From contig NC_135659.1 of NCBI RefSeq assembly GCF_964188315.1, positions 50,282,001 to 50,346,000 of the forward strand: a stretch of 64,000 nt of DNA, in the 5' to 3' direction. This DNA comes from Podarcis muralis (taxonomy: Eukaryota). Both the position numbers and the translations under genes were made by a program. Below are positions 1,323 through 62,646 of this stretch, one piece after another (position 1 is the stretch's first letter; the number at the start of each line of letters is the position of its first letter). The notes under the pieces are model-generated. The model did no database searches, was not told where the DNA came from, and saw only the letters and a program-made list of their open reading frames with translations.

Positions 1323-5948
<4,626 letters not shown>

Positions 5949-11800: not shown

Positions 11801-14800
11801 GTAGAAGAGTGGGTAAGGGAACATACAGATCTAGGTCCTCATCTTTTTTTGTCATTGTTTTGTTTTGACTTGGGTCCACAGGTTGTAGGAACTGACGCCC
11901 AATCACACACAAAGCAAAGAAGGAATAGACAGCGATGGTGACCACCTGTGGAGAAGCGGCTGTTAAACATTTGCCAGGGTTTCAAGAGAGCATCATGGAA
12001 CTATGTTTTTCATTGCAGAAACCAAAACATTCTCCTACAGTACAGGAGGTCTGCACATTATGCGCTAGCATGTCCTGCGCACCCTACCAATTCAAAAACA
12101 ATTAAACTGGCACTTTCACAAGCTGATCTATTTCCTAGCTTGTTAGTCAGCTGTTTCCCAACGAACATCAAATATTTTGGAGCTGGAAACTTGTTCCTTT
12201 CTTGTGCAATAAAAAAATGAGATGTTAAGTAAAACTAAGTAGAGTTGTGCTGTGGAGATGCACCAAGAGAGATTGAGAAAGTGTACGGGAAAAGTAACCT
12301 TTAGTCTACTTGTAGGAACAAAACTGCTACTGAGAGATGAGCATTGAGATGTGCAAGAGTATCCAGAGGGTGTGGAGTGCTCCTTGCTCACCTGTGTGTA
12401 CACCAAGGGGATGCTTATCCAGTCATAGTGGAAAAGCATGCTGCATTTGGAGCGGTAGAGGTTCAGTTCCTGGACAGAGAAAGACAGGTGGTTATTTCAC
12501 GTTTGCATAGCTGGTCAAGCAATTCCACTGCAATACTTACATCTATGAGCAATCTGAGCGCCACGTCATCCCGGATCCTTCCTTCCCGCCTGGCTTGGGC
12601 TGCTAGATTAGTGAACCACACACAAGGGATCCAATACTTGTTGAAGTCTGAGTGGTGACTCTCATACTTCTTGCGCTCATCTTGTGTCATGAAACCTGCA
12701 AGAGAGCAAGGGGAAGTTGGAGCACTGCCTCTCCATCTGCTCCTTGATACTGGGAAGAGCTTCAGGGGCCACCAGTCAGTGACACTGGGTCCTAATATGT
12801 TCTGGTGGAATAATCTCTTGATCCCTGTGGCACCTTAGGAAGACTAATAAAAGTAGACTCCCAGACCATCCTGTTCATTTCCCCAAGATAAACTCACCAG
12901 CTTCAACTAAGTGGTCCATAGTGGGGAATCTCTTAAGGACTCTAGCGCTGACCGAGCGCAGGATGAGCACAGAGGAGAGGTTGGCGTAACGGATGAGAGT
13001 GCGGCGCAAGATGCGGCCCTTGTCATCCTTCCCATGCACATTGCTGGAAATGACGCACATGAGCTGGTCTGGCAGAGGAATGCTGGTATACTGCGCCCAC
13101 CAGCGGTTCACGATCAGTGTGACATAGAAACCTGCCAGGAGAGAGAGGTGGAAGAGGGATGAGGGATGAGGACTTGGAAACAGTGAGAGAGCATGAGGTA
13201 AGGTCATCAGGCATAATGAACTGCTGCCATTTTAGCACGTTGGCACTGAGAGCAGAAAAATTCTACCCATTTGAGCTCTAGGAGTTGGTTAACTTGTCAA
13301 ATAATTTTGTTAAGGAATTGTTAAAGAAGTTATCTGTATGACACAAGACAAAATTTCACTCCCCTTTTTGTTGGTTGGTCATCTTTACAAAAGAAGCAAA
13401 AACATTTATGAAAGCTACAAAACTAAAGATTTATGAAGTTGTCAAATTATTTTTTACATTTAGAATTTGGTAATGAAAAGTTTCAGTATACTGTGTACCT
13501 CAGAGCTTGCTATTTCTTGTTAGGCAAATAAAATTCTTTAATACTTAGTGCAGAAGTCTGCAATCACAATTTAGAGGCAGTTTGTTTACAAAAATTCTTC
13601 AAAGAGTCCACACATGTTAATGGTGGGAACCATTTCTCTAGGAAATTGCTTAGGATTTGTCATAATCTTCAACTGAGTACCAATCTTATCTGCTGAAATT
13701 TCACTCTTTTTAAAAGAGTTAACACTCTTGGAAAGAAATAAGAGCATTTTTCAGTCTGTGGCTGAGTCAAAAACCAAACAGCAGCCACACAAAAGAGGAA
13801 AGTGCAAAGAGTTATATTTATCAATATTCAGGGATTCTGGCAGGCATGGAGGCAAACCAACCCTTGCTCTTATCTATATTTGCACATATTAACAAAAGAT
13901 CAACACATTCAAAACCACTGGGCTTCCCCCCTGCCCTCCCATTTTCCCTTCTTGAAGCTTTCCTATGCGGGGGAAAAATGGTATGTTTCCCATCCAGGCA
14001 AAGAACAAGAGGGTTCCTCTTCCCACCCCACCTGCATATTGCATGTACGGAAACAGAGTCGACAACAGTACTGATGTGGCAGTAACCTCAGCCATGCCTG
14101 AAGGCTAGCTTAGGAAGTGCAGGGCAGGCCCCATGGTACACACAGATCTCTGCCTTCCAACACCTCAACTCTGGTCCTTAGTCCTCAGCATCTTCTGCCT
14201 GAGGCAGTTGCCCCATCTGCCTAATAGAAGGGTTGTGTGAAGCTGAGGCTCCAGTACTTTGGCCACCTCATGAGAAGAGAAGACTCCCTGGAGAAGACAC
14301 TGATGCTGGGAAAGATGGAGGGCACAAGGAGAAGGGGGCGACAGAGGACGAGATGGTTGGATAGTGTTTTCGAGGTTACCAGCATGAGTCTGACCAAACT
14401 GCGGGAAGTAGTGGAGGACAGAGGTGCCTGGCGTGCTCTGGTCCATGGGGTCACGAAGAGTCGGACACGACTAAACGACTAAACAATACCCTTCCCTTCC
14501 AATGCTTGCTATGGCATGACATAGGCTTCTTGGAAGCTCAAAAGAACACCTGGCCTGTGTGGAGAATCATTGTTTACTCCTTCCAGTGCCTTCCTTCTAG
14601 GAATAGCAAGTCCACACCTAATAATTCAGGCTAGGGAGAACTGCAGTTTTACTTCAGTTGACCTTTTTACAGTAAAGTTTTGCAAAGGCAATGAAAATTC
14701 ACAAGGGAATCATTTTTAAGCAGATCAATTTAGGCTTGCATTTCTGATATAGACTCTTCTAATGCAAAAACTAGGTCTGTTTACTCAGGAGAGTCAGGCA

Positions 14801-14986
14801 TGTTCATTGTGCTTTTTTGCAGCCCTAGCTGTACATCATTTAGACATAAACTCTCTCACCTGTCAAGCTGTCACTTTCTTTTCCATTTTAATTATCCATC
14901 TCCTACTTTTTCACTTCCCTTTTTTCATTTTGTGACACCACTCACAATTCTTTTTTCGTGATGTTGTGTTTGCTGCATTAATCTCA

Positions 14987-15040
<54 letters not shown>

Positions 15041-16926
15041 TCAGGGTCAGCCTCCGCAGTAATTCAGAGCAAGACTTTTAGAGTGGTCTATGGCAAGAGT
15101 CCTTCAGATCATCTGACCCCTCATTCACTCCTGGATGCATACCATGAGCTCTGCCACTGATTTGTGGTACCTCCCAATGGGAAATAATTTGGGATTCTGT
15201 GCAATCGGAAGATGAAAGGGGCTTTTACCAAATGCATGCATCTGGCCTTAATTAAAGCAAGCAATCAAGAAACCATAGCAACAAGGCCTCCTATCAAGAG
15301 CAGGTACATAATCATACCTAGGACAAAGGACAGAGGGATGAGGTCAGTTGAGCGGTTGCAGTATTCAGCCACCTTTGCAAAGAGACGTTTCTGATCCACA
15401 TTCAGAAGGTGCCTACAGGAGATGGGGAAGAAGAGGCTTGAACTCTCTCATGGTATAAACATTCTTCTTCAATCAAACAGGAGCCAGGGCTCTTCTCTGT
15501 CCCTGCCAAAGCAATCCCTCTGCTTGGTTAAGTACCAAAATAACTGTCACTATGGCAAACAATAGGATTCTTTCAAGGATACAAGGAATATTAAAACAAC
15601 AACTGCAACACTAATACCACCGCCAACAGATTTCACCAGCAGGTCCCAGGGCTTGTTACAACTATTTAAAATTCTGTATTAAAAACAGCTAAAACAAATT
15701 GCAGTCACAGGAATAAGGTAGGTCCCAAAAATACACAGCACTGGTATCAAGGCCAGGTACAGAGGTGTATCTTCAGCATTTGCTAAGAGCTATATAAAGA
15801 ACGTGCCAGACACACCCCTGTGTGGTGGGACCTCCACAACTTAGGGGCTGCTACAGATAATGCCTTATTGGGAAGGTGGTACCCCTCAAACCCTCAAAGC
15901 TCTACCAAGAGGACTCTGCTGATTTAAACACTCCATCAAGTCTGTAGGGACAGTGGTGATCTTTCAGATATTTGGGGCTTAAGTCATTTATGGGTTCCAG
16001 GGCATGAGACTCTAGGCATAAATGTGGCAGTCTCTGTAGTCTAAGCTCTACCCTTCTCATCAGAATCCAACAATACCCCACTCACCCATCCTGGCCAGCT
16101 AATAATGTTCAGGGGAAACAGATTATTCTGAATGTTAGAACAATTTGATTTATTTACTAGAATGATTACTATTATTTTATTTATATGTCTCTCATCTGAC
16201 TGGGTTGGCCCAGTCTGGGTGGCTTCCATCAAAATATTAAAAACACAATATTTAAATCACATGAGGGCAACCCATAGGCCTTTGCAGGCTATCTGTGCAG
16301 CCCACTGCAGGTATTCAGTCTGCCTCCCACAGCCAAATGTGCCCCTTGCGCACTGCCAAATTTTGCTCCAGGGCTGGCGAGGGGGTGGGGAGCACCATGT
16401 ATTTGGTCTCCTTCCAGCCCATTTGGTGGTCTGGAAAGAGCATGATTGTGATGGGAAGAAAGCCTGGAGAGCCATCCCCATGTAAATGACCTGGTGGGCT
16501 GCATGGAATGCAATTGTAATGGAGAGAAAGGCCCAGCAAGAAAGTCACCCCTGGGAGCCGCCTTCCCCACTAAACAGTCTTAATTCTGAGGTTGGTTTGA
16601 AGGGGGCAAGCAGATTGGTAATGAAGCTCTGAAAGTTGAGAGCAAAAGTACCACAACATTGAATGCTCCTGAAAAAAAGAACAGCAATTTTACGTTCTTC
16701 AACCATTTCAGACGTCTTTAACAATGTCCCCCTGGAGAGGTTTCATTCCATTAAACAGGATATTGCCAACTTACCGGTAGATGACACTTAGTGTTCCATA
16801 AAGCAAGACGAAGACAATGAACTCCTTGTAGAGCAGCTTGTAGATGCTCCCTTTCCAACGAAAAAGTAGCTTGGAGAAGCCCCCAAAGCGAGCATTGGCC
16901 ACTTTCAAGGTGTAGGAGACTGTCAT
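8467..16926 (-). CDS. BEST4: bestrophin-4 Ca2+-activated anion channel, complete, 9 coding exons, 514 aa
   Basis: complement join(16775-16926,15318-15412,12898-13131,12541-12695,12392-12469,11772-11945,10357-10437,9374-9528,8467-8887)=1545 nt, all GT-AG; [17 protein letters not shown]..., RFP motif, Ca2+ clasp [14 protein letters not shown]4-type tail [14 protein letters not shown]; synteny with RPS8 and PLK3. Confidence 0.97.
9374..9528 (-). CDS. BEST4: BEST4 coding exon 8
   Basis: [15 protein letters not shown]...SFMGSTFDM(R), 155 nt. Confidence 0.97.
10357..10437 (-). CDS. BEST4: BEST4 coding exon 7
   Basis: [27 protein letters not shown], 81 nt. Confidence 0.97.
11473..11703 (+). mobile_element. 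Tc1/mariner (Tigger-like) MITE, family A copy 1
   Basis: TIRs CAGTGGTACCTCGGGTTA / TAACCCGAGGTACTACTG, TA on both sides. Confidence 0.9.
11772..11945 (-). CDS. BEST4: BEST4 coding exon 6
   Basis: [10 protein letters not shown]...FFYAGWLK, 174 nt. Confidence 0.97.
12392..12469 (-). CDS. BEST4: BEST4 coding exon 5
   Basis: [26 protein letters not shown], 78 nt. Confidence 0.97.
12541..12695 (-). CDS. BEST4: BEST4 coding exon 4
   Basis: [12 protein letters not shown]...DVALRLLID, 155 nt. Confidence 0.97.
12898..13131 (-). CDS. BEST4: BEST4 coding exon 3
   Basis: [11 protein letters not shown]...[12 protein letters not shown](G), 234 nt. Confidence 0.97.
14237..14486 (+). mobile_element. BovB (RTE) LINE 3' fragment
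   Basis: encodes [25 protein letters not shown]...[12 protein letters not shown], then CTAAACAA tail. Confidence 0.92.
14991..15036. repeat. (CA)23 microsatellite
   Basis: direct reading. Confidence 0.95.
15318..15412 (-). CDS. BEST4: BEST4 coding exon 2
   Basis: [31 protein letters not shown](G), 95 nt. Confidence 0.96.
16775..16926 (-). CDS. BEST4: BEST4 coding exon 1 (acceptor at 16960, 33 nt of 5'UTR)
   Basis: [50 protein letters not shown](R). Confidence 0.96.
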
Positions 16927-20243: not shown

Positions 20244-20254
20244 ATTACAGCTAA

Positions 20255-23025: not shown

Positions 23026-23509
23026 TGTCATAAGCAGAATGTTGCTGATCTAAATCTAATTTTTCAGTTCTTCTTCAAGATTAAAGCAAACTCACCTGTT
23101 TCCCACCTGTCCCTCTTGTTGTGACACAATTGTGGTTTGGATTGCATTAGGCTAAGTTGTGGTGGGTGGGTGGTATTGCCTGGTAGGACAGAGCATATTC
23201 CATAGTTGTAGATCTTTGATGAGAAGAGCATATTTTGCAGATATAGTAAGTCATTAATGTTGCGCCTGCTGAATGTCTGTCTCAATAGGCAAATCCCACC
23301 CAGTTGTTCCACAATGCCTCATTCTGAGTAAGGGTGCAGAAAAAGGAGGAGGTGGAGTGGCAGGGGCATCATTTGCTGGTCCTCCTCAGGTGGCAAAATG
23401 TCTTGGGCCATCTCCGTTCATATAACAGCAATACGAAAGCAAGAAAAAGACACGCTTTTGCATCTTTGTCAAACTCTTACAAAAGGTAGAACATAGCCAT
23501 TTATTCCAT

Positions 23510-23712
23510 AAAAAAATTCCTTCCAGTAGCACCTTAAAGACCAACTAAGTTAGTTCTTGGTATGAGCTTTCGTGTGCATGCACACTTCTTCAGATACACA
23601 CATGCACACGAAAGCTCATACCAAGAACTAACTTAGTTGGTCTTTAAGGTGCTACTGGAAGGAATTTTTTTTGTTTTGACTATGGCAGACCAACACGGCT
23701 ACCCATCTGTAA
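23510..23712. mobile_element. Penelope-like element terminal remnant (inverted pseudo-LTR pair) with 12-bp TSD
   Basis: about 70-bp perfect inverted arms (23510-23583 / 23601-23671) plus tail ...CCAACACGGCTACCCATCTGTAA; TSD CATTTATTCCAT at 23498-23509 and 23713-23724. Confidence 0.85.
23560..23597 (-). ncRNA. minimal type-I hammerhead ribozyme motif
   Basis: minus strand GTAT-CTGAAGA-A-GTGTGCATGCACAC-GAAA-GCTC/ATAC: stem I GTAT/ATAC, core CUGANGA and GAAA, palindromic stem II, palindromic AGCU stem III. Confidence 0.75.
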
Positions 23713-24148
23713 CATTTATTCCATGTTATTTACATTCCCCCCCGCCATACACTAGTATTCTTTTCTTCTCTTTTTGAAAGGGATGCAGTCCAGAAAGATC
23801 ATAGATTGAATAGTTTACTGCAAAAGTTAGATCAGGACAAAAATATATGTTAAGTCTTTTACATTCAGTGTATTGTGGTTTATAACGATGGGGAGTTAAG
23901 ATGCCAGTGTCTCTTTGGGAAGCAGGGCTGTCATGTGGAATACATTTATACAGCTATACATCTTGCTCTTGAGAAAACCGGGAAGCATTGCAACACGGTA
24001 GAAAGAGCTTTACAAGATCACAATTCAAGGACACAGTCTAACCAGGGGAAAGCACTTGAGGTGCCAGAGAGGTGCCAGGGGGCCAGAGAGAGAGATACGC
24101 ATTAGACACCCTGCAGGCCTGAGGTGCCTCATCCTCAGCCTAGAAGAG

Positions 24149-26543: not shown

Positions 26544-27784
26544 TCAGCAAAGGTCAATATTCTCATATTCCATGTGGTCCGAGTCCTCCAGTTCAATGCC
26601 TGGAACCAGGTTGTAATAATCTACCGACTGGTTCATATAGAGCTTTTCACGGTCTGCAGAATCCTTCAGAACGTCTGTCACACTCACTGTCTCGGCTTCA
26701 GACTCCCCACCTGTGTAACCCTCCTCTGCAACGGTCGTTTTTTTGGATCCCGACTTATCTTGTTCAAGGCTTTCCCCATTGGCCTTCACCAAGGAATCAT
26801 CAGAAGCTCCCAGTTTGATCTCCACCTCTTCATAGAGGTCCCTGCTGCTCCCTAGTAGTGCAGCTGAAGGCTTAAGCAAGACCTGGTTCCTCAACAAGAT
26901 GTTCTTCTCGCTCTCTGCAGCTGATGCCATAGGCAGCTCACATGGCATGTAGCAGTGATGGTCCCCAGGCTCTTTGGAACCATTCCTCTCCACTGTAGCC
27001 AGCCGGCATTCCTTCCCAGCATGAGGATGGTAGCTGGTTTTCTTCTGCCGCTTGCAAAAGCACCAGGTGACCAGAACCAGAATAGCCACCACAGGCAGGC
27101 AAACAAAGAGAGCCGTTAGGCTATGGTTCCGGCACACCTCCTGCTTAGGGATATCTCTGAGATTCATGCCATGGTAACGTTCTGGGGTGCTACAAGCCAC
27201 CTCAACGTTCAATGGTGCAGGTAGGCATTTTTCCAGATCTTCAAGCAAGCTGCAAGTACAGTGCCAGCTGTTGTTGGAGAGACCTAGCGTGAGGAGGGAG
27301 GGTTTGAAAATCCCCGAGGGAAGGGAAGACAAGTTATTGAAGGCAAGGTGGATCTCCTGGATTTGGTCAGATGCTTTCAGGAATGACTCAGGCAGCTTCT
27401 GGAGTTGGTTGCTCTCCAAATGAATGACACGCAAGCTGGGTGCATTTCCTAGGAAACCATCTGGGAGCAAACTTAGCTGGTTATGGTCTAAGTGTAGAAT
27501 CTCCAATGTAGAAGAGCCATTCTCTGTGTTGATAATGTCTGATATGCCACAGTTTGATAGGTAGAGCTCCCTCAAACCCGCAGTTCCGGCGAAGATGCTC
27601 CAGTCCAAGGAGTTGATTTTAGTCCTGGTGAGATTCAAGCAACACATCTCAGGAGCCAATTTGGTCTGCAGTCCCTGGAAATCAACTTCTGCGCTGCAGT
27701 TGCACGTCTCTTCCAGAGCTCCTAACACGAGTTCTCTTGATAAGAGGACCACGCCAAAGAGTATGAGTGTCCACCTCTTCTGAC
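26544..27784 (-). CDS. LRR receptor main coding exon
   Basis: acceptor catctttttgctatag|GTCAGAAG at 27785/27784; open through the stop at 26544-26546 (ORF track 402 aa). Confidence 0.92.
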
Positions 27785-27969
27785 CTATAGCAAAAAGATG
27801 ACAAGCGTCAGTGATTTCTCACAGGTTACAGGCGGGAACTAGATGGCAACATTGTTCTTCCTGGTTCACTCACAGACATAACAGACAATAATCTGTGAAG
27901 TGCCATTGCCTCTAAATTGGATTCCAGTAGTTGTTCACTAAATTCACAAATAATGCATAGATATTTTTA

Positions 27970-28008
<39 letters not shown>

Positions 28009-31000
28009 ATTAATGTGTCTGAGCTAAATTATAATGTGAATTAGGTTTTAAAGAACCAGGAATGCCATTTTATTTAATGCATTAGCACCCCCTAGTGGCA
28101 ATGTATGCTTAAACACAGTATAGGTTCAATTAAATTCTTAAAAGTTTTAACTGGGCTGGATTTGGGTTCATATACCCTCTTGGGCCATAAAGAAGGCTGA
28201 TCGCCGAAGAATTGATGCTTTTGAACTATGGTGCTGGAGGAGACTCTTGAGAGTCCCATGGACTGCAAGAAGATCCAACCTATCCATTCTGAAGGAAATC
28301 AGCCCTGAGTGCTCACTGGAAGGACAGATCGTGAAGCTGAGACTCCAATACTTTGGCCACCTCATGAGAAGAGAAGACTCCCTGGAAAAGACCCTGATGT
28401 TGGGAAAGATTGAGGGCACAAGGAGAAGGGGATGACAGAGGACCTATAGTGAGTACAGTGGTACCTCAGGTTACATACGCTTCAGGTTACATACGCTTCA
28501 GGTTACAGACTCCGCTAACCCAGAAATAGTGCTTCTGGTTAAGAACTTTGCTTCAGGATGAGAACAGAAATCGTGCTCCGGCGGCGTGGCAGCAGCAGGA
28601 GGCCCCATTAGCTAAAGTGGTGCTTCAGGTTAAGAACAGTTTCAGGTTAAGAACGGACCTCCAGAACGAATTAAGTACTTAACCCGACGTACCACTCTAT
28701 CAGCTTTAGCTCACTGCGAAAGGAGCTTAGAGTGGTACATATTTGACTATTCCATTCTTGCAATTATAACTTATGAAGCAACAACTCCATTACTTCCTAG
28801 CGTATCAATGGGAACACACACCTGGAGGCTTCTGGTGGCTGCGTGGGCTGATGACATCACTAGTTTGTGCCCCAGCTGGTCGCTGGAGCTTATTACCATA
28901 CAGGTGTAGCATCACAGAACAATATTCTTCCTTGAATAGCGATAAGGATCAGGACCCAGAGGCCAAAGGGTTGAGTGCTCTCCTCCTCTTATCAGCAACC
29001 AAGGGCTCTGAGGAAGACTGTGCTATACCACTGCACCTGTATGCTCACCAACCATCACCACCCACCAAAATAGCCTGGTGACCTTAATCACACCACACTT
29101 GTCACTGGGGGCACTGTGGAGTCACAGTGAACAGCATGACTCTCCTCCAAGTGCTAAGTTGCTGGTATGAGAAAGGGCAGCTACTACTGACCAGATTCAG
29201 GCAGCAGGATGTCCAAATCTGGGCCCGGATATATATATATAGCCTGTTGGTTGAGGCTGATAGGAGTACATTTAAACTTCATAATTTACAGCTTTATAAC
29301 TTGGTTGTTGTTTAGTCGTTTAGTCGTGTCTGACTCTTTGTGACCCCACGGAACAGAGCACGCCAGGCACTCCTGTCTTCCACTGCCTCCCGCAGCTTGG
29401 TCAAACTCATGTTCGTAGCTTCTATAACACTGTCCAACCATCTCGTCCTCTGTTGTCCCCTTCTCCTTGTGCCCTCCATCTTTCCCAACATCAGGGGCTT
29501 TTCCAGGGAGTCTTCTCTTCTCATGAGGTGGCCAAAGTATTAGAGCCTCAGCTTCACGATCTGTCCTTCCAGTGAGCACTCAGGGCTGATTTCCTTCAGA
29601 ATGGATAGGTTTAATCTTCTTGCAGTCCATGGGACTCTCAAGAGTCTCTTCCAGTACCATAATTCAAAAGCATCAATTCTTTGGTGATCAGCTTTCTTTA
29701 TGGTCCAGCTCTCACTTCCATACATCACTACTGGGAAAACCATAGCTTTAACAATACGGACCTTTGTTGGCAAGGTGATGTCTCTGCTTTTTAAGATGCT
29801 GTCTAGGTTTGTCATTGCTTTTCTCCCTGCAGTGATCATGGAGCCCAAGAAAGTAAAATCTCTCACTGCCTTCATTTCTTCCCCTTCTATTTACCAGGAG
29901 GTGATGGGACCAATGGCCATGATCTTAGTTTTTTTGATGTTGAGCTTCAGACCATATTTTGTGCTCTCCTCTTTCACCCTCATTAAAAGGTTCTTTAATT
30001 CCTCCTCACTTTCTGCCATCAAGGTTGTGTCATCTGCATATCTGAGGTTGTTGATATTTCTTCCAGTAATCTTAATTCCGATTTGGGATTCATCCAGCCC
30101 AGCCTTTCGCATGATGAATTCTGCATACAGTGGTACCTCAGGTTAAGAACTTAATTCATTCTGGAGGTCCGTTCTTAACCTGAAACTGTTCTTAACCTGA
30201 GGTACCACTTTAGCTAATGGGGCCTCCCGCTGCTGCCACACTGCCGCCACACGATTTCTGTTCTCATCCTGAAGCAAAGTTCTTAACCCGAGGTACTATT
30301 TCTGGGTTAGTGGAGTCTGTAACCTGAAGCATCTGTAGCCTGAAGCGTCTGTAACCTGAGGTACCACTGTATATAATTCCGATTTGCAGGAAGTCACTCC
30401 TTTAGCATTGCAACACCTGTCCTCTGGAACTACTGACACTAGGCAGGCACCCCTTCACTATACTGTTTTAGATGCTTGCTAAATAGGTACTCATCTGTTC
30501 CAGCAAACCTATCCAGACACATAATTTAGTGCTTGCATTGGCCATCAATCACTGAATCGAACACCTAGCCCAAGAAAGAGACATTTGCATCTGTTTAGTA
30601 TTATAATCCTCTGAATCGAAGGAGACTTTCTTCAGGAGTGGTCTTGCATATTCTTCCTTCCTGGCAGCTGGAACCATTCCCTGTGCGAGGAAGGCATTTA
30701 TAATCTCCTGAACCTAGTCCCTTTCCAGTAGCTGCAAAAAGCCATGAAACGCAAAGGTTGAACACATAAGTTCAGGCTGGGTCTACTGTACCTAAGACTA
30801 GCATTGACTACCACCCTAAATGTTGTTGCTCTCCATCTCCCTTCAGCCGCCGCCAGCATGGCCAATGGTCAGGGATGGTGGCAGCTGTAGTCCATCAATA
30901 TCTGGAGTGCCACACATTCTCCTCTCCTTCTGTAAGGAAGTCAGGAAGAAGGACCTAAGTAATTGTGTTCCCTCTAAGATTGTCCCACTGATCTTTAGTG

Positions 31001-34000
31001 CAGAGCCAACCACTCCCTGCCACTTGTATTGAGGTGTCTCCCTCAGCCCTTCCTGCTTTGGTTACCTAGGCACTCTCATATGTTGATAGGGTTTCTGAAG
31101 CAACCAGACCAAATGCAAACAAAGAATTGCCTCCAAATCCCTTGCAAACAGTGATTAGCTCCATCTTTGCTGTTAACACAGCTCAGAGAAGTAATCACAC
31201 TCTTGCTAAGGTGGCCTTTAGACATTATATCAGCACCACGGGAGGCATTTTTCAAGGAGTGAGTGAGCCCGTAGTACAGATATTACTCACCACAGCCTGG
31301 GCAGGGCTGAGCATGAAGACCTTTCCTTGGAATTGTTACCTGTCCTCCCAGAAGGGGTTTTGAGTCTGTGATGTGGGGAAACCCGCAAACTGATCCCATC
31401 CATGTGGTCTTGGGGTTCAAATGGTACTGCCCCACTGTGGGATGAACCCATTGGAAAAAACAGCTCCCAAACCAGTGTTAGAAACTGAGATATGAAAGCT
31501 AGGAGCTAAATGGCACCTCAAACCTAGGTTATAGGCGCAACAACGGAATGTCTAGGCACACTTTTTTATAACAAGAATACAAAGCTGAAAATGAATGAAC
31601 TGCAGCTAAAATCTTGTGTTCATTTTTCACATGGTCTAGTCCTCATCTGAAGACTGCAAAAAACAAAGCCATGCTTCCCTGGCCACCCCACTAATATTCT
31701 TAAGAGGGTCCCTTCTGCAGTCTTCAGAGAGTGGCTGGAAGTAGGGAGGCAGAAAAAGGTCCTCTTTTCCTTCCACTCTGCAGACAAGCCCTGGATTCTC
31801 CTTTACCCTCTTTGCTTCATATAAATATATCTTTTTGGCACCACAATTAACACATATTAAAGGCCTATACAACTGATGGCAGAGACACCCACCTTGAGCG
31901 TCCGGTTTGCAAACCTTAGGTTTAAGGGTCCTTCAATGATCCTACTCCAAAATTTGATTTTAAACATCACTGTGAGAGTCTGAGGTAGATAACACTTTAA
32001 CATGCACTACTTAAACCATGGACACGACTAAACAACAACAACTTAAACCATCGTAACTAACTGGCTGGTATATTTCAAATTAAAAGCACATCATACATTA
32101 AAAGTACATTAAACAAGGCAACTAAAACCTAAACAAAACATGCTGGGTTTAAAAGAAAAGAAAAAAGTTTTCAGGTCCCCATTCCATGCACGTTTTACTT
32201 GGGAGGAAGCCCCATTGAACTCTGTTGGGACTTACTTCTGAGTAACAGTGGCAAGTTTAATCTGAAATCTTAGATGCAGTACTGCACCTAAGAGCTCAGA
32301 AACTGTTTGTGTTCATTAAATTCCCTGTCGCAAAACGTGCCTAGAACAATGCGAGTTTCGAACGCTGTCCCAAACAGCTGTGAGAACATTTCTCTCTGTC
32401 TAGCCTACCTCACAGGGTTGTTCTGAGGATAAAATTGGGAGTGGAAGAACCATCTATACCACCTTGTGCTCCTGAAGTAGCTCAAAATGTAATAAATAAA
32501 TAAAATTAATGAAAAGTTTCTCTGGGATGCAATATGGAACACCTTAAAAGGTTAGTGCATAGGCAAGTAATATAATAGGCAGGCTGAGTTTCATGGGACC
32601 AGAAGGATCCACTGAAAGGATCCACTCTACTAGGCAAAGGTTAGGCAGACAGCACATAGTTCAGGGGAAGTGAACCCAATGTGATCTCACTGAGTGCTTG
32701 AAGCATTTTAAGTGCATCTGAAGCTGCTTCTAATAAACATTTCACAAGGGGAGAGGAAAGTTGGTTGCAGAGAAACCCTTCTGCATCAGGGTAGGGCTTT
32801 GGGGCTGATGCCGGGGCTCCACTCCGCAGAAGGAGCAAGAGGTTCCCCCAAACACAGAAGGGCTGTCTTGTTACATTTTGAAGTGAGCAAAGTCATAATT
32901 ATCTAAAAAGGGCATTCCCAGAAGTCCAGAGTCTAAAACAAATCGCTAGAGTGCACTACTTCCTCTCTGTCAGTCATGTACAGTGGTGCCCCGCAAGACG
33001 AATGCCTCGCAAGACGAAAAACCCGCTAGACGAAAGGGTTTTCCGTGTTCGATGCGCTTCGCAAGACGATTTTCCCTATGGGCTTGCTTCGCAAGATGGA
33101 AACGTCTTGCGAGTCTTGCGATTTTTTTCGCCCCCCCCCCTTTTCCTAAGCCGCTAAGCCGCTAATAGCCTTTTAGCCGCTAAGCCGCTAAGCCTTTAAT
33201 AGCTGCTAAGCCGCTAATAGCGCTAAGCCGCTAATAGGGTTGCTTCGCAAGACGAAAAAACCGCTAGACGAAGAGACTCGCAGAACGGATTATTTTCGTC
33301 TTGCGAGGCACCACTGTAGTGACCTTCTGACGGTATGGAAAAAAGGAAACGAGAAGGATTGGAACTGTGTTTCTGAAGCTTTTGTAACCTGTAATAGGGC
33401 ATGTGGGTTTTTTTATGGATTAGAACAGAAAGCACAATTTACCCTTGCACTCAGGAGAGATGCTCTGATGGTAGCCAAGAAGCGGATATTGATGAACTGG
33501 AAGAGTAAAGATTGGATTGATATGATAACACTTGCAACCTACGAACCGACTGCTTACAGACATAGACTCTGCTTGGATAAGTATGACAATATTTGGAACA
33601 AATTTATACAAAATGTAGTAGACTATTAATATTTCTATTAGGATAATATCAAATTTATAAAAGAATGTATGGGTTAGGGTATTTTTTGTACTGTATATAT
33701 TCATATAATGTTTTTTTCCCCTTTACACAGTTCTGTGTTTTGTTCCTTTCCCCTTTTCTTCTTTTTGTATCACTTTACTGCTTTATATTTGATTTTTTTC
33801 CAACGAAATATGAATTAATTAGAGAGAGAGAGAGAGAGAGACATATATATTTTCTTGGTCTGCTCCCAGAACGATGGGCAGGCATCCTTGCAACTAATAT
33901 TGCCCGCAGCTCTGTCCACTCTTCCCCTTTACTCAAGGGTTCAGGATGAGGCCAGGCTTCCTGGGCAATGGGGATGTTTCTGGAATTCTCTCATGCCTGT

Positions 34001-37000
34001 CAGGGAGACTCATTCCCTTGGAAAGATGCCACTGCCCATGTATGGGCAGAAAGAGGGAGGATCAATGCTGCTTGGGGCCTCTGTGTTTCAACAGGCAGAG
34101 AGTGGTGGATGAATCCAAAACACTGGCTTAACTTTTTTAAGGCATGTCTTGGCACACAGTTTGGAAATCCCTGGACTAGAATGTACCATGTAGAAACCCT
34201 TGCTAGTAGATTCCAGGGGCAGAGAGGCACAACCTCAAACTGGTGCTCATATATATATCATGTATTTACAACATTTATCTGCTGTAACTGGATGCCATTT
34301 CACTTATATAAATAAATGACTTCAGCCCCAAATATCTGAAAGACAGTCTCCTTCCGTGCAGCCCCTCTTGGGAGTTAAGGTCCTCCACCCTCAGATGCTC
34401 AGGCATGGGGTTGACCCATGACAGAGGGTTCTCTGTGGCTGCCCCTACATTGTGGAGTTCAGTCCCCACAGAGGTGTGTCTACACTTTCATTGTACAGCT
34501 TTCATCCTATGCTGAAGATACACACCTCTTAACTCTTGCCTTTGACACTTGAGAGATATAAATAAATTTAGGACCCACTCTAGTTGCAATTGTAATTTGT
34601 TTTAAGGTGTTTTTAAAGTTGTATTTTACATTGTTCTGATCTGGGACAGCTTAATTCTGAGCTTTTAACACCTCAGACCTAGATTTCTAAAAGCTAAATT
34701 GCTTCTTATTTGTCTCTCTTGACAAGCTCCCATCTTATAGCCAAGCCAGCCGCTACTTGTGTTTCTATAATGTTATGCTTCTGCCATTGTGTGTAATCGG
34801 AAGTTGTGGTGCTTTGGAACCCGTTCAGGAGACATTGATTTTATCTAGGCAGTGCTGGAACAATTAAAATACCTTGGGCCGGAATAGGGTCCCTCCCTGG
34901 ACTCTTCCTGAGCAACGATGTCAGCTTTTCCTCCCCAGGCTATTGTCCTTAAAGGTCCAGTGACCACTCCCAACTTGTAAAGCAGCTTATTAAAATTAGT
35001 GCCCGATTCCCTGAGAAATGTAAAAGCGGCAAAGAGCAGCAGCCGTACCTCTGTTGGTGTGAACAGAAACCAGCACTATTTTGGCCAGGAGCAAAATTGT
35101 TTTTTCCAGAAGGGTCATGATTAAACTGTAGATTTGTATTTGTCATGGAATCATAGGATGTAAATTAGTACAGTACTAATGGGTTTCCCAAAAAATTGAG
35201 ACAAATTGATGGTAGCCAGGCCAAAACAATATCTGTTAAGGTACAATTTTGTGGGAGGGACGCAGACCCGAAATTTTCTAGCTGCTAAAATCATATGCTT
35301 GACAATAGATGGCTTGCTTCACAAATGTGCTTTTGTTGTACCATTTCCTTTGAAGCATCTGACTCAGGCTGCTGTTAGGCACAGGATATTAGATTAGATC
35401 CATAGCATTCACAAGGCAGTCTGTGATCCCTTTGTTTACAGCCTCTGGGCCGGCCCTAACATTATGCCGATTGAGGCGGTTGCCTCAAGCAGTGGATACT
35501 GGATGGTGGCGGCAGCAACCATCCTCCTTGAGCTGGCAGAAGTAAGATCCCAGTAGTGGGAATGCTTGCTGTGTCGCCTAGGCTCCTTCTCCCAATGTGT
35601 CACAGACAGCACAACTGTGAGCAGGCAATGAGGCACCATGCAGCCCAGGCCATGAACTCCTACAGGCATCACACACTCCAATCATGTGATATGTATTGGT
35701 GCAGCAGCTGCAACACAGCATTACTTTCTGCAGGTAGCATATAGGTGTCAAGCAGAGTGGGAGTAAGGTGCTGGAGGACAGAGCTGTGTGTGTGTCATGC
35801 AACCTGGCCTGCACCCCATTAGCACATAAGAAAAGCCCTGCTGGATCAAACCAAAGCCCCATCTAGTCCAGCATTCTGTTCTCAACATGGTCAACATGTT
35901 GATGTCCACAGGAAGTCCACAGGCAATATGTGAGCATGACAACACTCGCCCTACCCACTAAGCTAGCCTGCTGTGCTTGGGTGAAGTGAGAGATGCTGCC
36001 CCATCAAAAGCACTGAAGTAGGATTAAGTTACTAGTCTAGTCCGCGCCTGTGTGTGCAATTGAGGAGGAGGGAATATTGTCCTTTGCCCCAGGCAGCAAA
36101 ATTATTGGGTCAGCTATGAGTTTTATTCTTCTTACCCCATTTCCCATACCTGGTCCAGGTAGCTCTCTCAGGTGATGAGTGCACATCTCTCCCCCGCCTC
36201 CTTTTCTAGCATAACATGCACATGGAAAGCTGAATCATATATCCCTGGTAGGGAAGTTAACGAGCTTCAAAGTAAGGCAGAATGCATTGACTCTGTCCCT
36301 GCTAGGGGAGGTCATGAGTTCTCCGTTTCCATGTTATTCTGAAAGCACAAAATCCAGGTATGCAGCTGACTCACAGGCACACTCTCACCATTTCCTGCAT
36401 TGTGAAATGCTGCCCTAAGGTGGCCACTTCCCATCGCTAGACCTCTGTTTACAGCCTTGTTACCAGGGTTAAATAGCTCTCTTGCGGGCAGAAACAAATG
36501 GCCAGAATGCTCACGGGTGCTAGGCATTGCACCGTTTCACAGTGCAGGTGAAAGACTGCCTATTTTAATACTCCCCATGTACACTAGACCACAGTTGTCT
36601 GCCTGCAAGGAGTGGGATGTAGCATCTCATTTGCCTCTGAACAGTGATTCAGAATTTACCGTCACCACATACTTCTTGCTCAGACATCCTAGCAATGGCT
36701 CTAAAGTTTTTTTCTGCCTAACCCGTTAGGCAAGCTACCCTGCTTGCCCTACCCTGCTCCACACCTTACACCCAGGTCTGCATTGTGATATCTTGCAGTA
36801 GGATGCCTATATCCAACACTGTAACCCTGTGAGCGACACTGCTCTTTTCACCTTCTCATAGGCAGCCCCTCCACAGTCTCACATGCTACATTGGGCCAGG
36901 ACAGACAAATGATGTGTTGCGGTCCATGCTGTGCGACTTGCACAAGTGACGCGAGGACATCGCACAACGTGCATGCACGGCATGTGCACGGTTGCCATGG

Positions 37001-38683
37001 AATTTTGAGGTGGCTCAGCCTCTACTTGAAAATCTGGGGGGCCCTCGGCCTCCGCCGCCCTCAGATGGCGCCCCTGCCCCCTGCACACCACATTTCCATG
37101 TACAGAAGTTGATGGGACAGGTTCTTGAATCTTACTTCAACATTTGCGACAGGGCAGCATCCTCCACCACACGAGGGCAGGCACCTGTAGCACACACAGC
37201 TCCGCCCTCCAATACCTGCTTGCCGCCCCTGAGCATTTGCCACCTGAGGCAGCTGCTTCACTTTGCCTAATGTTAGGACTGGCTCTGGGACCAGCTCTGG
37301 CTATTCCTTCCCCAGCTCTTCTTCAAAGGAGGAGTAGAACTTGGGGGTGCTGACACACAAGCGCGTGGTGCCGCCACTGTACGCTGAACGTTCCCCCAGT
37401 AACCAATTCTGTGCCAGGGGAAGTATGTAACCCTGGAGCGAAAGCAGCTGCCTCAGGGGAATTGCCTGGTGTGTAACAATTATACCAGCGCAGGTAGTGC
37501 ACCCTTGGTGACCTTTCCTGAAGTTTACTATTTGCTTGGTTACAAAAATATAGCAAACAAGCGATCAAGCCTTTCCAGAGCCACCCATTCCTCTCCCAGG
37601 GACTGCTGCCCCCTAGAGCCCTGGGGGTGCAAGTGACTCGGGAGAAGGGCAATTGAGGAACTGTGGGAAACCCGGCCGAAAAGATGGAAAGCGATACCCT
37701 CCCTTGGACCTGCTTCGCGCCGCCAGCCAGTGGCGATGAGAGAAACGTTTCATTTCTCCCCCAGAAGAGCTAAATGCTGCCCTGATGCTCACGCACTTTC
37801 ACCCACGAGAATACGGTCCAGCACGAGGTATCTTTTTACCTTCTTTTGTTACGTCCAGCGGCACACAAAATACTCTGAGGAGCAGTCCTATCCCCCCACC
37901 CCACCTGTTTGCGTTTTTGAAAAGGGTGAAGTCTCTCCCCCCCCCCTCCCCTTCATGTTTGGCTGAAAAAAGGAGAAATGGATACTCAGGGCCCTTTGAC
38001 TGCGGGGCAAACCAGGGAGGCAAGAAAGCGGATTTTTCTCCTCAGTGGCCGCCTCCCCCCCCCCCCCCGCCTGGATCAGACTTGGAACAATGAGGCCCCT
38101 GTTTCTTTAAGACTCGCCGGCCGAAACTCCGCGTTCTTCTCCCTCAAAATAACTTGACCAGAGGGGAGCCTGGTCTCCCGGGATACAAGGTCAGAAACAG
38201 AGGGCATCTTCTCTCTGCTTCATGGCAAACCACCTCGGGCCGAGCCAAGAAATGGCAAGGAGACCCTCGTCGCCGTCCCAGATTGCTTTCCCCCTTGACA
38301 GATCAGCCAGCGCTCCTGGGAACAACGCAGCTCGCTTTTCCCACACAGGCGAGCAGGGCAGCTGCGCGCGATCCCCACCCCCCAAACTCTTAGGGTGTAG
38401 TGGGGATTAGACGAGGGCTCCCCCTATAGATGGGTGGAGATACAACCTGACCCCCCCCCCCCCGCCTCGCCCCAAAGTCTCATTGACCCACTGATTCATT
38501 GATCCAATATCTCGGCTGCGCTGGACGGACGCTCGTAAGGGAGCAAGAAACGCAAGAGGGCGCTCTCGGGCGGGAGGGGTAAGGGGAACCCTAGGCGAAC
38601 CCCACCCGCCTCGCCCAGGGCGGTGAGGGTGGCGCGCCCAGCCCTGCAGATGTCCAGGACTCACCTGCCCCGTCCCGTCCCAT
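26544..38683 (-). CDS. single-pass leucine-rich-repeat receptor, LRRC25-like, predicted 419 aa
   Basis: complement join(38665-38683,26544-27784)=1260 nt in frame; signal peptide MGRDGAGQKRWTLILFGVVLLSRELVLG, 5-6 LRRs (LRELYLSNCGI, LEILHLDHNQL, LRVIHLESNQL, IQEIHLAFNNL, LLTLGLSNN), LRRCT (NSWHCTC...CSTP...C), TM LTALFVCLPVVAILVLVTWCFC, about 170-aa tail. Confidence 0.85.
27972..28004. repeat. (AC)n microsatellite
   Basis: direct reading. Confidence 0.95.
28181..28443 (+). mobile_element. BovB internal fragment
   Basis: [49 protein letters not shown]; lacks the 3' tail. Confidence 0.9.
28456..28697 (+). mobile_element. Tc1/mariner MITE family A copy 2
   Basis: TA-CAGTGGTACCTC...GACGTACCACTC-TA. 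Confidence 0.9.
29301..30127 (-). mobile_element. 5'-truncated BovB LINE
   Basis: ORFs with YADD and SESWTIKKAD; (CAA)-type tail at 29301; small internal deletion relative to the 19029 copy. Confidence 0.93.
30128..30369 (-). mobile_element. Tc1/mariner MITE family A copy 3 (inverted)
   Basis: TA-CAGTGGTACCTCAGG...CCTGAGGTACCACTG-TA. Confidence 0.9.
32981..33316. mobile_element. Tc1/mariner MITE family B with internal TAAGCCGC repeats
   Basis: TA-CAGTGGTGCCCCGCAAGACGAA ... TTCGTCTTGCGAGGCACCACTG-TA. Confidence 0.9.
33319..33820 (+). mobile_element. L1/Tx1-type LINE ORF2 C-terminus and 3'UTR
   Basis: ...ALMVAKKRILMNWKSKDWIDMITLATYEPTAYRHRLCLDKYDNIWNKF* resembles the ORF2 end of non-mammalian L1; followed by a T-rich 3'UTR and (AG)10. 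Confidence 0.65.
34330..34640 (+). mobile_element. decayed L2 LINE 3' fragment
   Basis: GGGTTCTCTGTGGCTGCCCCTACATTGTGGAGT...CTGAAGATACACACCTC resembles the L2 end. Confidence 0.5.
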
Positions 38684-39010
38684 TCTCTGGGCGCGTTGCG
38701 GGGAGCCTCTCTCAAGGCTCTTCCATACCTCGGGCGCTCCGGGCTGCCTGGCGGTGCGCGATCTCTGCCGCCGGGCAATACTTGGCTCTGCCTTCTTCCC
38801 CGGGGCGTGGCCCCCGCGGAACTGTTGCAAACGGCGCCTCGCCTGGGCTAGTAGCAAGCCGGCAGGCGCCTCAACGCTACGATCCGCTCACCCAGCACAC
38901 TGGAATTTCAGGGCAGCTGCGCGCATCTAAAAGCCAGGACAAACCTCTTTCCCGCACCTTGCATTTGGGCTCTGCTGAGAGAAATGTTGCGTGGTTCTCT
39001 TGGCGTCCTG
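37650..39010 (-). promoter_or_regulatory. CpG island / promoter of the LRR receptor gene
   Basis: high CpG/GC content; GC box GGGGCGTGGC 38802-38811; contains the predicted first exon and its donor. Confidence 0.7.
38665..38683 (-). CDS. predicted first coding exon of the LRR receptor (MGRDGA-G)
   Basis: ATGGGACGGGACGGGGCAG|gtgagt inside a CpG island; phase 1 matches the 27784 acceptor and completes a signal peptide. Confidence 0.65.

Positions 39011-54792: not shown

Positions 54793-62646
<7,854 letters not shown>

What the first reader, a model, noticed from the sequence alone, without database searches (positions are those of the whole stretch)
26544..38683. Unnamed LRRC25-like receptor between BEST4 and PLK3: candidate ohnologue lost in mammals
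Seen: an intact 419-aa type-I membrane protein (signal peptide, 5-6 LRRs, LRRCT, TM, long Tyr-rich tail). Recalled knowledge: no protein-coding gene lies between human BEST4 and PLK3. The human LRRC25 N-terminus (WTLLLPLLLRE...SADVD...CLN) resembles WTLILFGVVLLSRE...SAEVD...CLN here, and LRRC25 also ends in several YxN motifs. LRRC25 is on 19p13, which is paralogous to 1p (BEST2/BEST4, PLK5/PLK3). Inference: this is a whole-genome-duplication sister of LRRC25 kept in reptiles, possibly an uncharacterised innate-immune regulator (LRRC25 is reported to dampen NF-kB and RIG-I signalling). It has more LRRs than I recall for LRRC25.
Basis: partly seen in the sequence, partly recalled or inferred. 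Interest (0 to 1): 0.8.

Follow-up and report, generated by a model that had tools for sequence, protein, structure and literature searches.

The report
Unnamed LRR receptor lost in mammals
Between the lizard's PLK3 and BEST4 genes lies an intact gene for a small leucine-rich-repeat surface receptor with an almost unchanging tyrosine-rich tail; sharks, fishes, frogs, turtles and birds all keep it, no mammal in the searched databases has it, and the proposed kinship to LRRC25 could not be shown.

Summary
A 19-nt first coding exon (38683-38665, minus strand) splices in phase 1 to one large exon (27784-26544). Together they encode a 419-aa type-I membrane protein with a signal peptide, a four-Cys cap, six LRR strands, an LRRCT, a transmembrane helix and a 169-aa tail.

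It is the lizard orthologue of an unnamed gnathostome gene (zebrafish si:ch211-106k21.5). All 120 listed hits were orthologues, from chimaera to birds, and none was a mammal. An exhaustive profile search with the tail found only 20 cluster representatives. The ten whose names I checked are bony fishes, a bird and a gharial.

The gene is under purifying selection (dN/dS 0.24 overall, 0.025 in the C-terminal boxes). It keeps PLK3/BEST4/RPS8 neighbours in a finch and a teleost, and the same splice appears in another squamate's intronless transcript-like contig.

The LRRC25-ohnologue idea is neither shown nor excluded. No LRRC25 sequence could be fetched, and no search by tail, ectodomain or fold recovered LRRC25. 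Only a whole-protein embedding ranked it first among foreign clusters. Chicken has a separate LRRC25 on chromosome 28, so this gene is not a relocated LRRC25.

Most likely function (inferred): a possibly palmitoylated receptor whose invariant YEEV, YYxLVP and YExV tyrosines dock SH2 proteins. No paper on the gene was found.

The parts
38500..38999 (.). CpG-island-like stretch around exon 1; likely promoter
   Evidence: GC 0.65 and CpG observed/expected 0.83 in 38500-38999, against 0.11-0.29 further upstream of the gene at 39000-40499
38665..38683 (-). Coding part of exon 1: ATG plus 16 nt (M G R D G A and the first base of Gly7), followed by the donor CAG|gtgagt
   Evidence: Sequence read. The Lacerta agilis orthologue starts with the same residues. 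The finch has a 19-nt first coding exon and Xenopus a 7-nt one, both phase 1
27785..38664 (-). Intron 1 (10.9 kb, phase 1), carrying LINE reverse-transcriptase remnants
   Evidence: An intronless contig from another squamate aligns to the window only from 27786 onwards
26544..27784 (-). Exon 2 coding part, including the stop codon at 26544-26546
27720..27784 (-). Remainder of the signal peptide (residues 7-28, hydrophobic core WTLILFGVVLL)
   Evidence: Read from the sequence; modelled as an N-terminal helix. The cleavage site was not predicted with a dedicated tool
27123..27719 (-). Ectodomain, residues 29-227: CxC...CC cap, six LRR strands, and an LRRCT with four invariant cysteines
   Evidence: Pfam LRR_8 E 7.7e-18. 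Invariant columns. Ectodomain model has pLDDT 88 and pTM 0.85
27054..27122 (-). Transmembrane segment, residues 228-250, with near-invariant L229, T230 and P237 and the juxtamembrane Cys250 before KRQKK
   Evidence: Translation; conservation; helix
26547..27053 (-). Cytoplasmic tail, residues 251-419; acidic and predicted disordered
   Evidence: pLDDT below 50; no Pfam family matches; dN/dS 0.17 for TM plus tail
26808..26888 (-). Tail box 1, with Tyr324 in DLYEEVE
   Evidence: Translation. Y, E and E are 100% and V is 99% conserved in 102 orthologues
26547..26705 (-). Tail boxes 2 and 3, with Tyr389, Tyr396, Tyr397 and Tyr413 (KLYMNQ, YYNLVP, EYENIDL)
   Evidence: Translation. The tyrosines are 97-100% conserved. 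dN/dS is 0.025 against another squamate
23500..23720 (-). First two AATAAA signals downstream of the stop on the gene's strand (23505-23500 and 23720-23715); they imply a 3'UTR of about 2.8-3.0 kb
   Evidence: No AATAAA or ATTAAA lies nearer the stop. No RNA evidence for this species
9373..16926 (-). Downstream neighbour: bestrophin (BEST4) exons, on the same strand
   Evidence: tblastn with a teleost bestrophin gene, 67-83% identity. NCBI models in Anolis and Rhineura file the LRR protein as a 'bestrophin-4 isoform'
54847..62653 (+). Upstream neighbour: polo-like kinase (PLK3) exons, transcribed divergently
   Evidence: tblastn with the finch polo-box kinase gene that lies next to the finch orthologue
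1752..5947 (+). RPS8 exons
   Evidence: tblastn with finch RPS8, up to 95% identity

Best explanation
This is the lizard copy of an old, unnamed vertebrate gene (zebrafish si:ch211-106k21.5; 'LOC' genes elsewhere). It encodes a small cell-surface receptor. A glycosylated ectodomain of six leucine-rich repeats lies between cysteine caps. A single membrane helix follows, then a juxtamembrane cysteine and basic residues (a likely palmitoylation site), then a 169-residue disordered acidic tail. The ectodomain varies moderately between lineages. Three short boxes in the tail have barely changed since sharks and bony vertebrates diverged. They hold five invariant tyrosines: YEEV (the textbook optimal ligand for Src-family SH2 domains), Y[ML]xQ, YY[NS]LVP and YE[NS][VI]DL. 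The last two are YxN, a Grb2-type site, in sharks and most amniotes. Inferred mechanism: ligand binding clusters the receptor, Src-family kinases phosphorylate the tail, and SH2 proteins dock on it. The protein would then act as a receptor with a built-in LAT/NTAL/PAG-style adaptor. The gene has kept its place next to BEST4 and PLK3 and appears to have been lost on the mammalian stem. Shown here: gene model, orthology, constraint, synteny, and absence from the mammalian proteins held in the searched collections. Inferred only: palmitoylation, phosphorylation, binding partners, ligand and tissue.
For: Gene model. Orthologues: 120 of 120 listed hits share the tail boxes, and identity to the window ranges from 94% (Lacerta) to 43-47% in cartilaginous fishes. 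The gene tree recovers chondrichthyans, ray-finned fishes, frogs, squamates and turtle plus archosaurs as starred clades, with one sampled sequence per species. Constraint: dN/dS against a second squamate is 0.24 overall, 0.30 in the ectodomain, 0.17 in TM plus tail and 0.025 in boxes 2-3. Tail conservation across 102 orthologues. Expression in relatives: a 1637-nt Logan contig (SRR12656982) and an 1812-nt one (SRR13269323) carry the whole CDS without the intron. The squamate contig joins its first exon at the same phase-1 junction. Synteny: in the finch, PLK lies on one side (divergent), the LRR gene in the middle and RPS8 on the other. In the remora, the LRR gene is followed by bestrophin on the same strand. 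The window shows the same order. Family limits: the tail profile against 1.84 billion representatives gave 20 hits. The ten I named are bony fishes, a bird and a gharial, and seven others were already known as non-mammals. No Pfam family matches the tail. The tiny phase-1 first coding exon is also present in finch and Xenopus.
Against: No RNA data for this species were available, so expression here rests on relatives. The function rests on motif reading alone. The +2 Asn of the YxN sites is only 56-67% conserved (Ser in frogs and teleosts), so Grb2-type docking cannot be the universally conserved role. The same YxxV/L and EKNxLL motifs could serve as sorting signals. 'Absent from mammals' means absent from predicted proteins. 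A 50%-identity cluster could hide a mammalian member under a non-mammalian representative, three representatives were not named, and unannotated or pseudogenised copies were not looked for.
Confidence: 0.6

Rival explanations
1. One reading: the gene is the whole-genome-duplication sister (ohnologue) of LRRC25, kept outside mammals. This concerns origin and is compatible with the mechanism given above.
For: Same overall build: signal peptide, short LRR ectodomain, LRRCT, transmembrane helix, tyrosine-motif tail. In the whole-protein Atlas search the LRRC25 cluster is the first foreign cluster (rank 7, score 0.96, 186 of 256 features). Human LRRC25 is described with a YENM motif and an ITAM-like pair (PMC6107485). 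A chicken LRRC25 primer encodes PDYENV, and this family ends in EYEN[VI]DL. From recalled knowledge, not tested: 1p31-34 and 19p13.11 belong to one 2R paralogon (PIK3R3/PIK3R2, MAST2/MAST3, RAB3B/RAB3A, PDE4B/PDE4C, JAK1/JAK3), and LRRC25 lies close to PIK3R2. The family is found only in jawed vertebrates in these searches, which suits a 2R origin.
Against: The exhaustive tail-profile search found no LRRC25 at E<=0.001. The ectodomain profile, length-filtered so that 300-aa proteins were eligible, listed no LRRC25 (limited by the word index). LRRC25 is not in the top 30 Foldseek matches to Swiss-Prot for either the whole model or the ectodomain model, nor in the Atlas shape search. The Atlas similarity vanishes for the tail alone (best score 0.59). 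For ectodomain plus TM alone the nearest foreign clusters are LRRC38, LRRC26 and LRRC3. LRRC25 is described with fewer repeats, 2 to 4, against six here. By the same recalled paralogon logic, LRRC19 (next to TEK on 9p21, with TIE1 on 1p34) is an equally good candidate.
Confidence: 0.35
2. The tail motifs are mainly sorting signals. On this view the protein is an endocytic or lysosome-directed LRR receptor that uses YxxV/L motifs and an acidic dileucine (EKNxLL) to bind AP adaptors, rather than a phosphotyrosine scaffold.
For: YNLV, YEEV and YENI all fit the YxxO pattern, where O is a bulky hydrophobic residue. EKNILL fits [DE]xxxL[LI] and is moderately conserved. The acidic clusters around the C-terminal tyrosines resemble sorting and CK2 sites.
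Against: Sorting motifs tolerate much variation. Here whole 17-25-residue boxes are nearly invariant over the whole of jawed-vertebrate evolution (dN/dS 0.025), including positions that sorting signals do not use. YEEV matches the best Src-family SH2 ligand exactly. The dileucine is only about 50-60% conserved.
Confidence: 0.15
3. It is an auxiliary subunit of an ion channel, like the LRRC26/38/52/55 gamma subunits of BK channels. The partner could be the bestrophin gene next door.
For: Ectodomain plus TM is nearest to LRRC38 and LRRC26 clusters in the Atlas. LRRC26 gives TM-score 0.77 by query in Foldseek. The membrane helix has near-invariant Leu, Thr and Pro, which hints at a partner within the membrane. 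The gene has stayed directly upstream of bestrophin on the same strand from teleost to lizard, and annotators merge the two genes.
Against: The long conserved tyrosine tail has no counterpart in BK gamma subunits. The house finch keeps the LRR gene although no bestrophin-like sequence is left within 10 kb of it. Fold similarity to six-repeat LRR modules is generic: Slit, SLITRK and TRIL score equally well.
Confidence: 0.07
4. It is the true LRRC25 orthologue, moved to this locus.
For: Only the architectural resemblance and the Atlas lead.
Against: Chicken LRRC25 is annotated on chromosome 28 among KXD1, TMEM59L, KLHL26 and DDX49, the neighbours of human LRRC25 (PMC7379350). Birds also carry this gene beside PLK3 and RPS8. 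The position next to bestrophin is already present in a teleost.
Confidence: 0.03

Closest known systems
si:ch211-106k21.5 (zebrafish) and the 'uncharacterized LOC' genes of sharks, fishes, amphibians and sauropsids
   Same: Orthologues: same length, cap, six LRRs, LRRCT, transmembrane helix and three tail boxes. Identity is 38-94% over the full length, and the neighbours are the same where they could be read.
   Different: None in kind. The automatic names given to them (SLITRK1/3/5/6, TLR3, TLR8, FLRT3, chondroadherin-like, bestrophin-4 isoform, alcohol dehydrogenase) are wrong or accidental. No paper in the library holds the zebrafish name or six of the LOC numbers.
LRRC25 (MAPA), human 19p13.11
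   Same: Type-I membrane protein with a short LRR ectodomain, an LRRCT and a tail with tyrosine motifs, including a YEN-type motif. First foreign cluster in the whole-protein embedding search.
   Different: 305 aa with 2-4 LRRs, against 419 aa with six. Different locus. No detectable similarity in the tail-profile, ectodomain-profile or fold searches. Coexists with this gene in birds.
Transmembrane adaptor proteins LAT, NTAL/LAB, PAG/Cbp, LIME, SCIMP
   Same: Juxtamembrane cysteine motif after the helix, and a long disordered acidic tail studded with conserved tyrosines of YxN and YEEV type. SCIMP appeared as a weak embedding neighbour of the tail (score 0.56). This is what the tail probably works like.
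   Different: Those proteins have almost no ectodomain; this one has a 200-residue LRR domain. There is no sequence homology, since no Pfam adaptor family matches any of 30 tails.
LRRC26/38/52/55 (BK channel gamma subunits), LRTM1/2, TRIL, and single Slit or SLITRK LRR modules
   Same: The same cap, six-LRR and LRRCT module. Foldseek TM-score is 0.73-0.79 by query, and they are Atlas neighbours for ectodomain plus TM. The best solved relatives by sequence are an LRRTM construct (5a5c) and chondroadherin.
   Different: The N-cap has the pattern CxC...CC rather than the usual LRRNT spacing. The tail is unrelated. The similarity is no greater than that among LRR modules in general.

Membership tests
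Extracellular LRR type-I membrane proteins (eLRR superfamily) | Tandem leucine-rich repeats detectable by profile | tested here: met
   Pfam LRR_8 E 7.7e-18, LRR_4 8e-9, LRR_1 6e-6; six parallel strands in the models
Extracellular LRR type-I membrane proteins (eLRR superfamily) | Cysteine caps (N-cap and LRRCT), signal peptide and a single transmembrane helix | tested here: met
   Invariant C34, C36, C54, C55 and four LRRCT cysteines across 21-29 orthologues. Pfam LRRCT match is weak (E 0.026). Helices at the N-terminus and at 228-250. The signal-peptide cleavage site was not predicted.
The si:ch211-106k21.5 orthologue group | Full-length similarity including the three tail boxes | tested here: met
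   E down to 8e-261; all 120 listed hits carry the tail. The tail profile finds only this group.
The si:ch211-106k21.5 orthologue group | Position beside BEST4, PLK3 and RPS8, and a tiny phase-1 first coding exon | tested here: met
   Window, finch, remora, Xenopus exon structure, squamate transcript-like contig. Shark and frog flanks were too short to show neighbours.
LRRC25 | Sequence similarity above that to other LRR families (reciprocal best hit or sister position in a tree) | tested here: inconclusive
   No LRRC25 among the hits. No LRRC25 sequence could be obtained, so no direct alignment, hhalign comparison or tree was made.
LRRC25 | Locus among SSBP4, ISYNA1, KXD1 and TMEM59L-type neighbours (human 19p13.11, chicken chromosome 28) | tested here: not met
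   The gene lies between PLK3 and BEST4/RPS8. Chicken LRRC25 is on chromosome 28.
LRRC25 | About 300 aa with 2-4 LRRs | tested here: not met
   419 aa with six LRR strands, against 305 aa with 4 LRRs or 297 aa with 2 LRRs.
LRRC25 | Tail with YENM and an ITIM-within-ITAM | tested here: inconclusive
   YEN[VI] is present at the C-terminus. The YxxL/V and YxxI/V pair is 12-13 residues apart, longer than a canonical ITAM. These motifs are short and could be convergent.
Raft-type transmembrane adaptors (LAT, NTAL, PAG, LIME) | Very short ectodomain | tested here: not met
   A 199-residue folded LRR ectodomain
Raft-type transmembrane adaptors (LAT, NTAL, PAG, LIME) | Juxtamembrane cysteine (palmitoylation) motif and multiple SH2-docking tyrosines | not testable with these tools
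   At motif level these are present: Cys250 is at least 95% conserved and followed by basic residues, and five tyrosines are invariant. Acylation and phosphorylation need experiments.
Raft-type transmembrane adaptors (LAT, NTAL, PAG, LIME) | Sequence homology to the family profiles | tested here: not met
   No adaptor Pfam family matches any of 30 tails at E<=10
SLITRK (the commonest automatic name) | Two six-LRR modules in a protein of 700-1000 aa | tested here: not met
   One module, 419 aa. Foldseek aligns it to a single SLITRK module.
BK gamma subunits LRRC26/38/52/55 | Six-LRR ectodomain, transmembrane helix and a short polybasic tail; channel modulation | tested here: inconclusive
   The ectodomain fold matches (TM-score 0.77; Atlas), but the tail is long and unrelated. 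No sequence-level grouping was tested, and function cannot be tested here.

The most novel reading that the evidence does not exclude
A receptor and adaptor in a single chain. An LRR ectodomain is fused to a LAT/PAG-like, possibly palmitoylated phosphotyrosine scaffold that has been almost frozen since the origin of jawed vertebrates. It is encoded next to BEST4 and was lost on the mammalian stem. LRRC25 would be its shortened, fast-evolving 2R sister that remains in mammals. If so, non-mammalian vertebrates have a signalling input that mouse and human biology cannot reveal, and LRRC25's disputed function could be re-read from its better-preserved sister.
Probability: 0.3. Interest if true: 0.65.

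Novelty: new member of a known kind. Interest (0 to 1): 0.45.

Why it matters
The gene is predicted in many genome annotations, but it has no name, carries misleading automatic labels, and I found no paper on it. Its tail is among the most conserved disordered segments one is likely to meet: dN/dS is 0.025 and five tyrosines are invariant from chimaera to lizard. That points to fixed binding partners and a function important enough to be kept in every non-mammalian jawed-vertebrate class sampled. Mammals nevertheless appear to lack it. It is a clean candidate for functional work in zebrafish, Xenopus or chicken, and a useful outgroup for understanding small LRR receptors such as LRRC25 and LRRC19. 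It is not a new kind of system, because short LRR receptors with tyrosine-motif tails are known.

Tried and rejected
**Fetching LRRC25 for a direct comparison.**
- The full-length search listed only orthologues.
- An ectodomain profile, with the length filter arranged to exclude full-length family members, gave fragments of the family and then chondroadherin, VLRs and generic LRR proteins.
- Scanning metagenome contigs for a published chicken LRRC25 primer found nothing.

**Structure searches.** Foldseek against Swiss-Prot with the whole model and with the ectodomain model, and the Atlas shape search, all gave generic six-LRR modules and no LRRC25.

**Tail searches.** Pfam on 30 tails gave only transmembrane-driven noise. 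The Atlas on the tail alone gave no hit above 0.59.

**Literature.** No paper holds the zebrafish name or six LOC identifiers. One search with loose term logic was wasted.

**Microsynteny.** For the shark no DNA was returned, and for Xenopus no neighbour lay within 10 kb.

**Readings rejected.** A pseudogene or chance ORF is excluded by constraint and orthology. A SLITRK, TLR or FLRT identity is excluded because those are only automatic names. A relocated LRRC25 is excluded because birds have both genes.


Full report
**Observation.** The minus strand carries a 402-codon ORF at 26544-27752. Its frame stays open upstream to an acceptor, ctttttgctatag|GT, at 27784. At 38683 an ATG starts 19 coding nucleotides that end in a consensus donor, CAG|gtgagt, at 38665. 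Exon 1 sits in a CpG-rich stretch (GC 0.65, CpG observed/expected 0.83). The first AATAAA signals on the gene's strand lie 2.8 and 3.0 kb beyond the stop. tblastn with genes taken from a finch and a teleost locus confirms the neighbours: RPS8 at 1.75-5.95 kb (+), bestrophin at 9.37-16.93 kb (-) and a polo-like kinase at 54.85-62.65 kb (+).

**Anatomy of the protein.**
- Pfam finds LRR_8 (E 7.7e-18), LRR_4, LRR_1 and a weak LRRCT match.
- The ectodomain model is confident (pLDDT 88, pTM 0.85). It shows a cap, six parallel strands and an LRRCT.
- The full-length model adds an N-terminal helix, a transmembrane helix and a disordered tail.
- Across orthologues the four cap cysteines (CxC...CC) and four LRRCT cysteines are invariant.
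- In the membrane helix, Leu229, Thr230, Pro237 and the juxtamembrane Cys250 are at least 95% conserved.

**Identity of the gene.**
- A search of 5.8 billion protein clusters listed 120 hits, and every one carries the same tail.
- The hits come from sharks, rays, a chimaera, bichir, sturgeon, paddlefish, gar, bowfin, teleosts, coelacanth, lungfish, caecilians, salamanders, frogs, turtles, crocodilians, birds and squamates. Identity runs from 94% (Lacerta agilis) down to 38-47%.
- None is a mammal.
- Their database names are accidental (SLITRK, TLR3, FLRT3, chondroadherin-like, even alcohol dehydrogenase). The only stable label is zebrafish si:ch211-106k21.5.
- A tree of 26 sequences recovers chondrichthyans, ray-finned fishes, frogs, squamates and turtle plus archosaurs with strong support, as expected for vertical descent. 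I sampled one sequence per species, so copy number was not tested.
- No paper in the library holds the zebrafish name or six of the LOC identifiers.

**Evidence that the gene is real and used.**
- Against the coding sequence of another squamate, dN/dS is 0.24 overall, 0.30 in the ectodomain, 0.17 in TM plus tail and 0.025 in the last 53 codons.
- That squamate sequence is a 1637-nt contig assembled from one sequencing run. It holds the whole CDS with no intron.
- It aligns to the window only from 27786 onwards, and its own short first exon joins at the same phase-1 position.
- An elasmobranch contig of 1812 nt is likewise intronless.
- The finch has the same 19-nt first coding exon, and Xenopus has a 7-nt one, both in phase 1.
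- I had no RNA data for this species.

**Synteny.**
- In the house finch the gene lies between a divergently transcribed polo-box kinase and RPS8.
- In a remora it is followed by bestrophin on the same strand, as in the window.
- NCBI models in Anolis and Rhineura file the protein as a 'bestrophin-4 isoform', and a goose model fuses the two genes. This fits transcription running on into BEST4.
- Shark and frog flanks of 10 kb showed no neighbours.

**Absence from mammals.**
- Besides, I built a profile of TM plus tail from 30 orthologues and had HMMER read all 1.84 billion representatives of about 15 billion proteins.
- Only 20 passed E 0.001. The ten I named are teleosts, a pigeon and a gharial. 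Seven others were already known as non-mammals, and three went unnamed.
- No mammal, cyclostome or invertebrate appeared.
- This shows absence from predicted proteins, not from genomes.

**The LRRC25 question.**
- I could not obtain an LRRC25 sequence, so the direct test was not possible.
- The indirect tests give no specific support:
  - The tail profile does not reach LRRC25.
  - After family fragments, the ectodomain profile hits chondroadherin, lamprey VLRs and generic LRR proteins.
  - Foldseek on the whole model and on the ectodomain returns TRIL, SLITRK, Slit, LRRC26, LRTM1 and ISLR.
  - The Atlas shape search returns CPN2, TRIL, SLITRK and LRRC24.
- The only positive sign is the whole-protein embedding search, where an LRRC25 cluster is the first foreign one (score 0.96).
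- With the tail alone nothing scores above 0.59. With ectodomain plus TM alone the neighbours are LRRC38, LRRC26 and LRRC3. The signal therefore reflects overall architecture.
- Papers describe human LRRC25 as 305 aa with four LRRs, a YENM motif and an ITIM-within-ITAM (PMC6107485). A published chicken LRRC25 primer encodes PDYENV.
- The family here ends in EYEN[VI]DL and has a YxxL/V to YxxI/V pair 12-13 residues apart. These are short motifs, suggestive but not probative.
- From memory, 1p31-34 and 19p13.11 form a well-known 2R paralogon, and LRRC25 lies near PIK3R2. That fits the idea, but LRRC19 beside TEK (TIE1 is on 1p34) fits equally well.
- Chicken LRRC25 is on chromosome 28 among the usual LRRC25 neighbours (PMC7379350), and birds also have this gene. 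The 'relocated orthologue' reading is therefore excluded.

**Likely mechanism.**
- The tail has three boxes that have hardly changed since cartilaginous and bony vertebrates split.
- In 102 orthologues Tyr324 sits in DLYEEVE, with Y, E and E at 100% and V at 99%. Tyr389, Tyr396 and Tyr397 are 100% conserved and Tyr413 is 97% conserved.
- YEEV is, by established specificity data, the preferred Src-family SH2 ligand.
- YYNL and YENV are YxN sites in sharks and most amniotes, but the Asn is Ser in frogs and many teleosts.
- A juxtamembrane cysteine followed by basic residues is the usual palmitoylation context of the adaptors LAT, NTAL, PAG and LIME.
- I therefore read the protein as an LRR receptor with a built-in phosphotyrosine adaptor tail. 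This is inference from motifs.
- No adaptor Pfam family matches the tail, so the resemblance is in how it would work, not in membership.
- The rivals are a sorting-signal reading of the same motifs and a channel-subunit reading prompted by the LRRC26-like ectodomain, the conserved helix and the bestrophin neighbour.

**Verdict.** The 'kept outside mammals' part is supported and extends well beyond reptiles. The LRRC25 sisterhood remains an open and testable idea. The finding is an uncharacterised member of a known kind of protein, and its interest is moderate.

Noticed in passing
window 28168-30146; also 14165-14482, 19051-20324, 24729-25204, 48203-48630: Repeated ORF fragments of one LINE family: reverse-transcriptase pieces and a shared C-terminal stretch beginning [23 protein letters not shown]. 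One 268-aa ORF lies at 19051-19857. One copy sits inside intron 1 of the LRR gene.
   Followed up: no
L001:10001-20386 (house finch): The finch keeps PLK, the LRR gene and RPS8 in order, but no bestrophin-like sequence is found anywhere in the 21.5-kb locus. Only 4.2 kb separates the LRR gene from RPS8. BEST4 may be lost or moved in this bird.
   Followed up: partly
P0017 and P0019 (snakes); P0113 and P0132 (crocodilians): Snakes have Asn in place of the last conserved tyrosine (ENENVNL). The alligator protein sits on a long branch (1.01) with a shortened tail, and the gharial model lacks the membrane helix. This may reflect relaxed constraint or poor gene models in these lineages.
   Followed up: no
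P0002, P0009, P0064: Annotation pipelines treat the LRR gene and BEST4 as one locus ('bestrophin-4 isoform X2/X4', and a goose LRR-bestrophin fusion). This hints at read-through transcripts between the two tandem genes.
   Followed up: no
L002:10001-11212 (remora): In this teleost the annotated CDS is a single exon starting at an ATG inside the equivalent of exon 2. The tiny first coding exon may be tetrapod- or annotation-specific.
   Followed up: no
window 54000-56000: A second GC-rich block (GC 0.54 over 2 kb) lies at the first PLK3 coding exon (about 54847-55021). It is probably the PLK3 promoter island. No ORF with recognisable homology was seen in the 16 kb between it and exon 1 of the LRR gene.
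   Followed up: no
window 27054-27122: The membrane helix has near-invariant Leu229, Thr230 and Pro237 across 102 orthologues. That is unusual for a simple anchor and is unexplained. It may mark a partner within the membrane.
   Followed up: no
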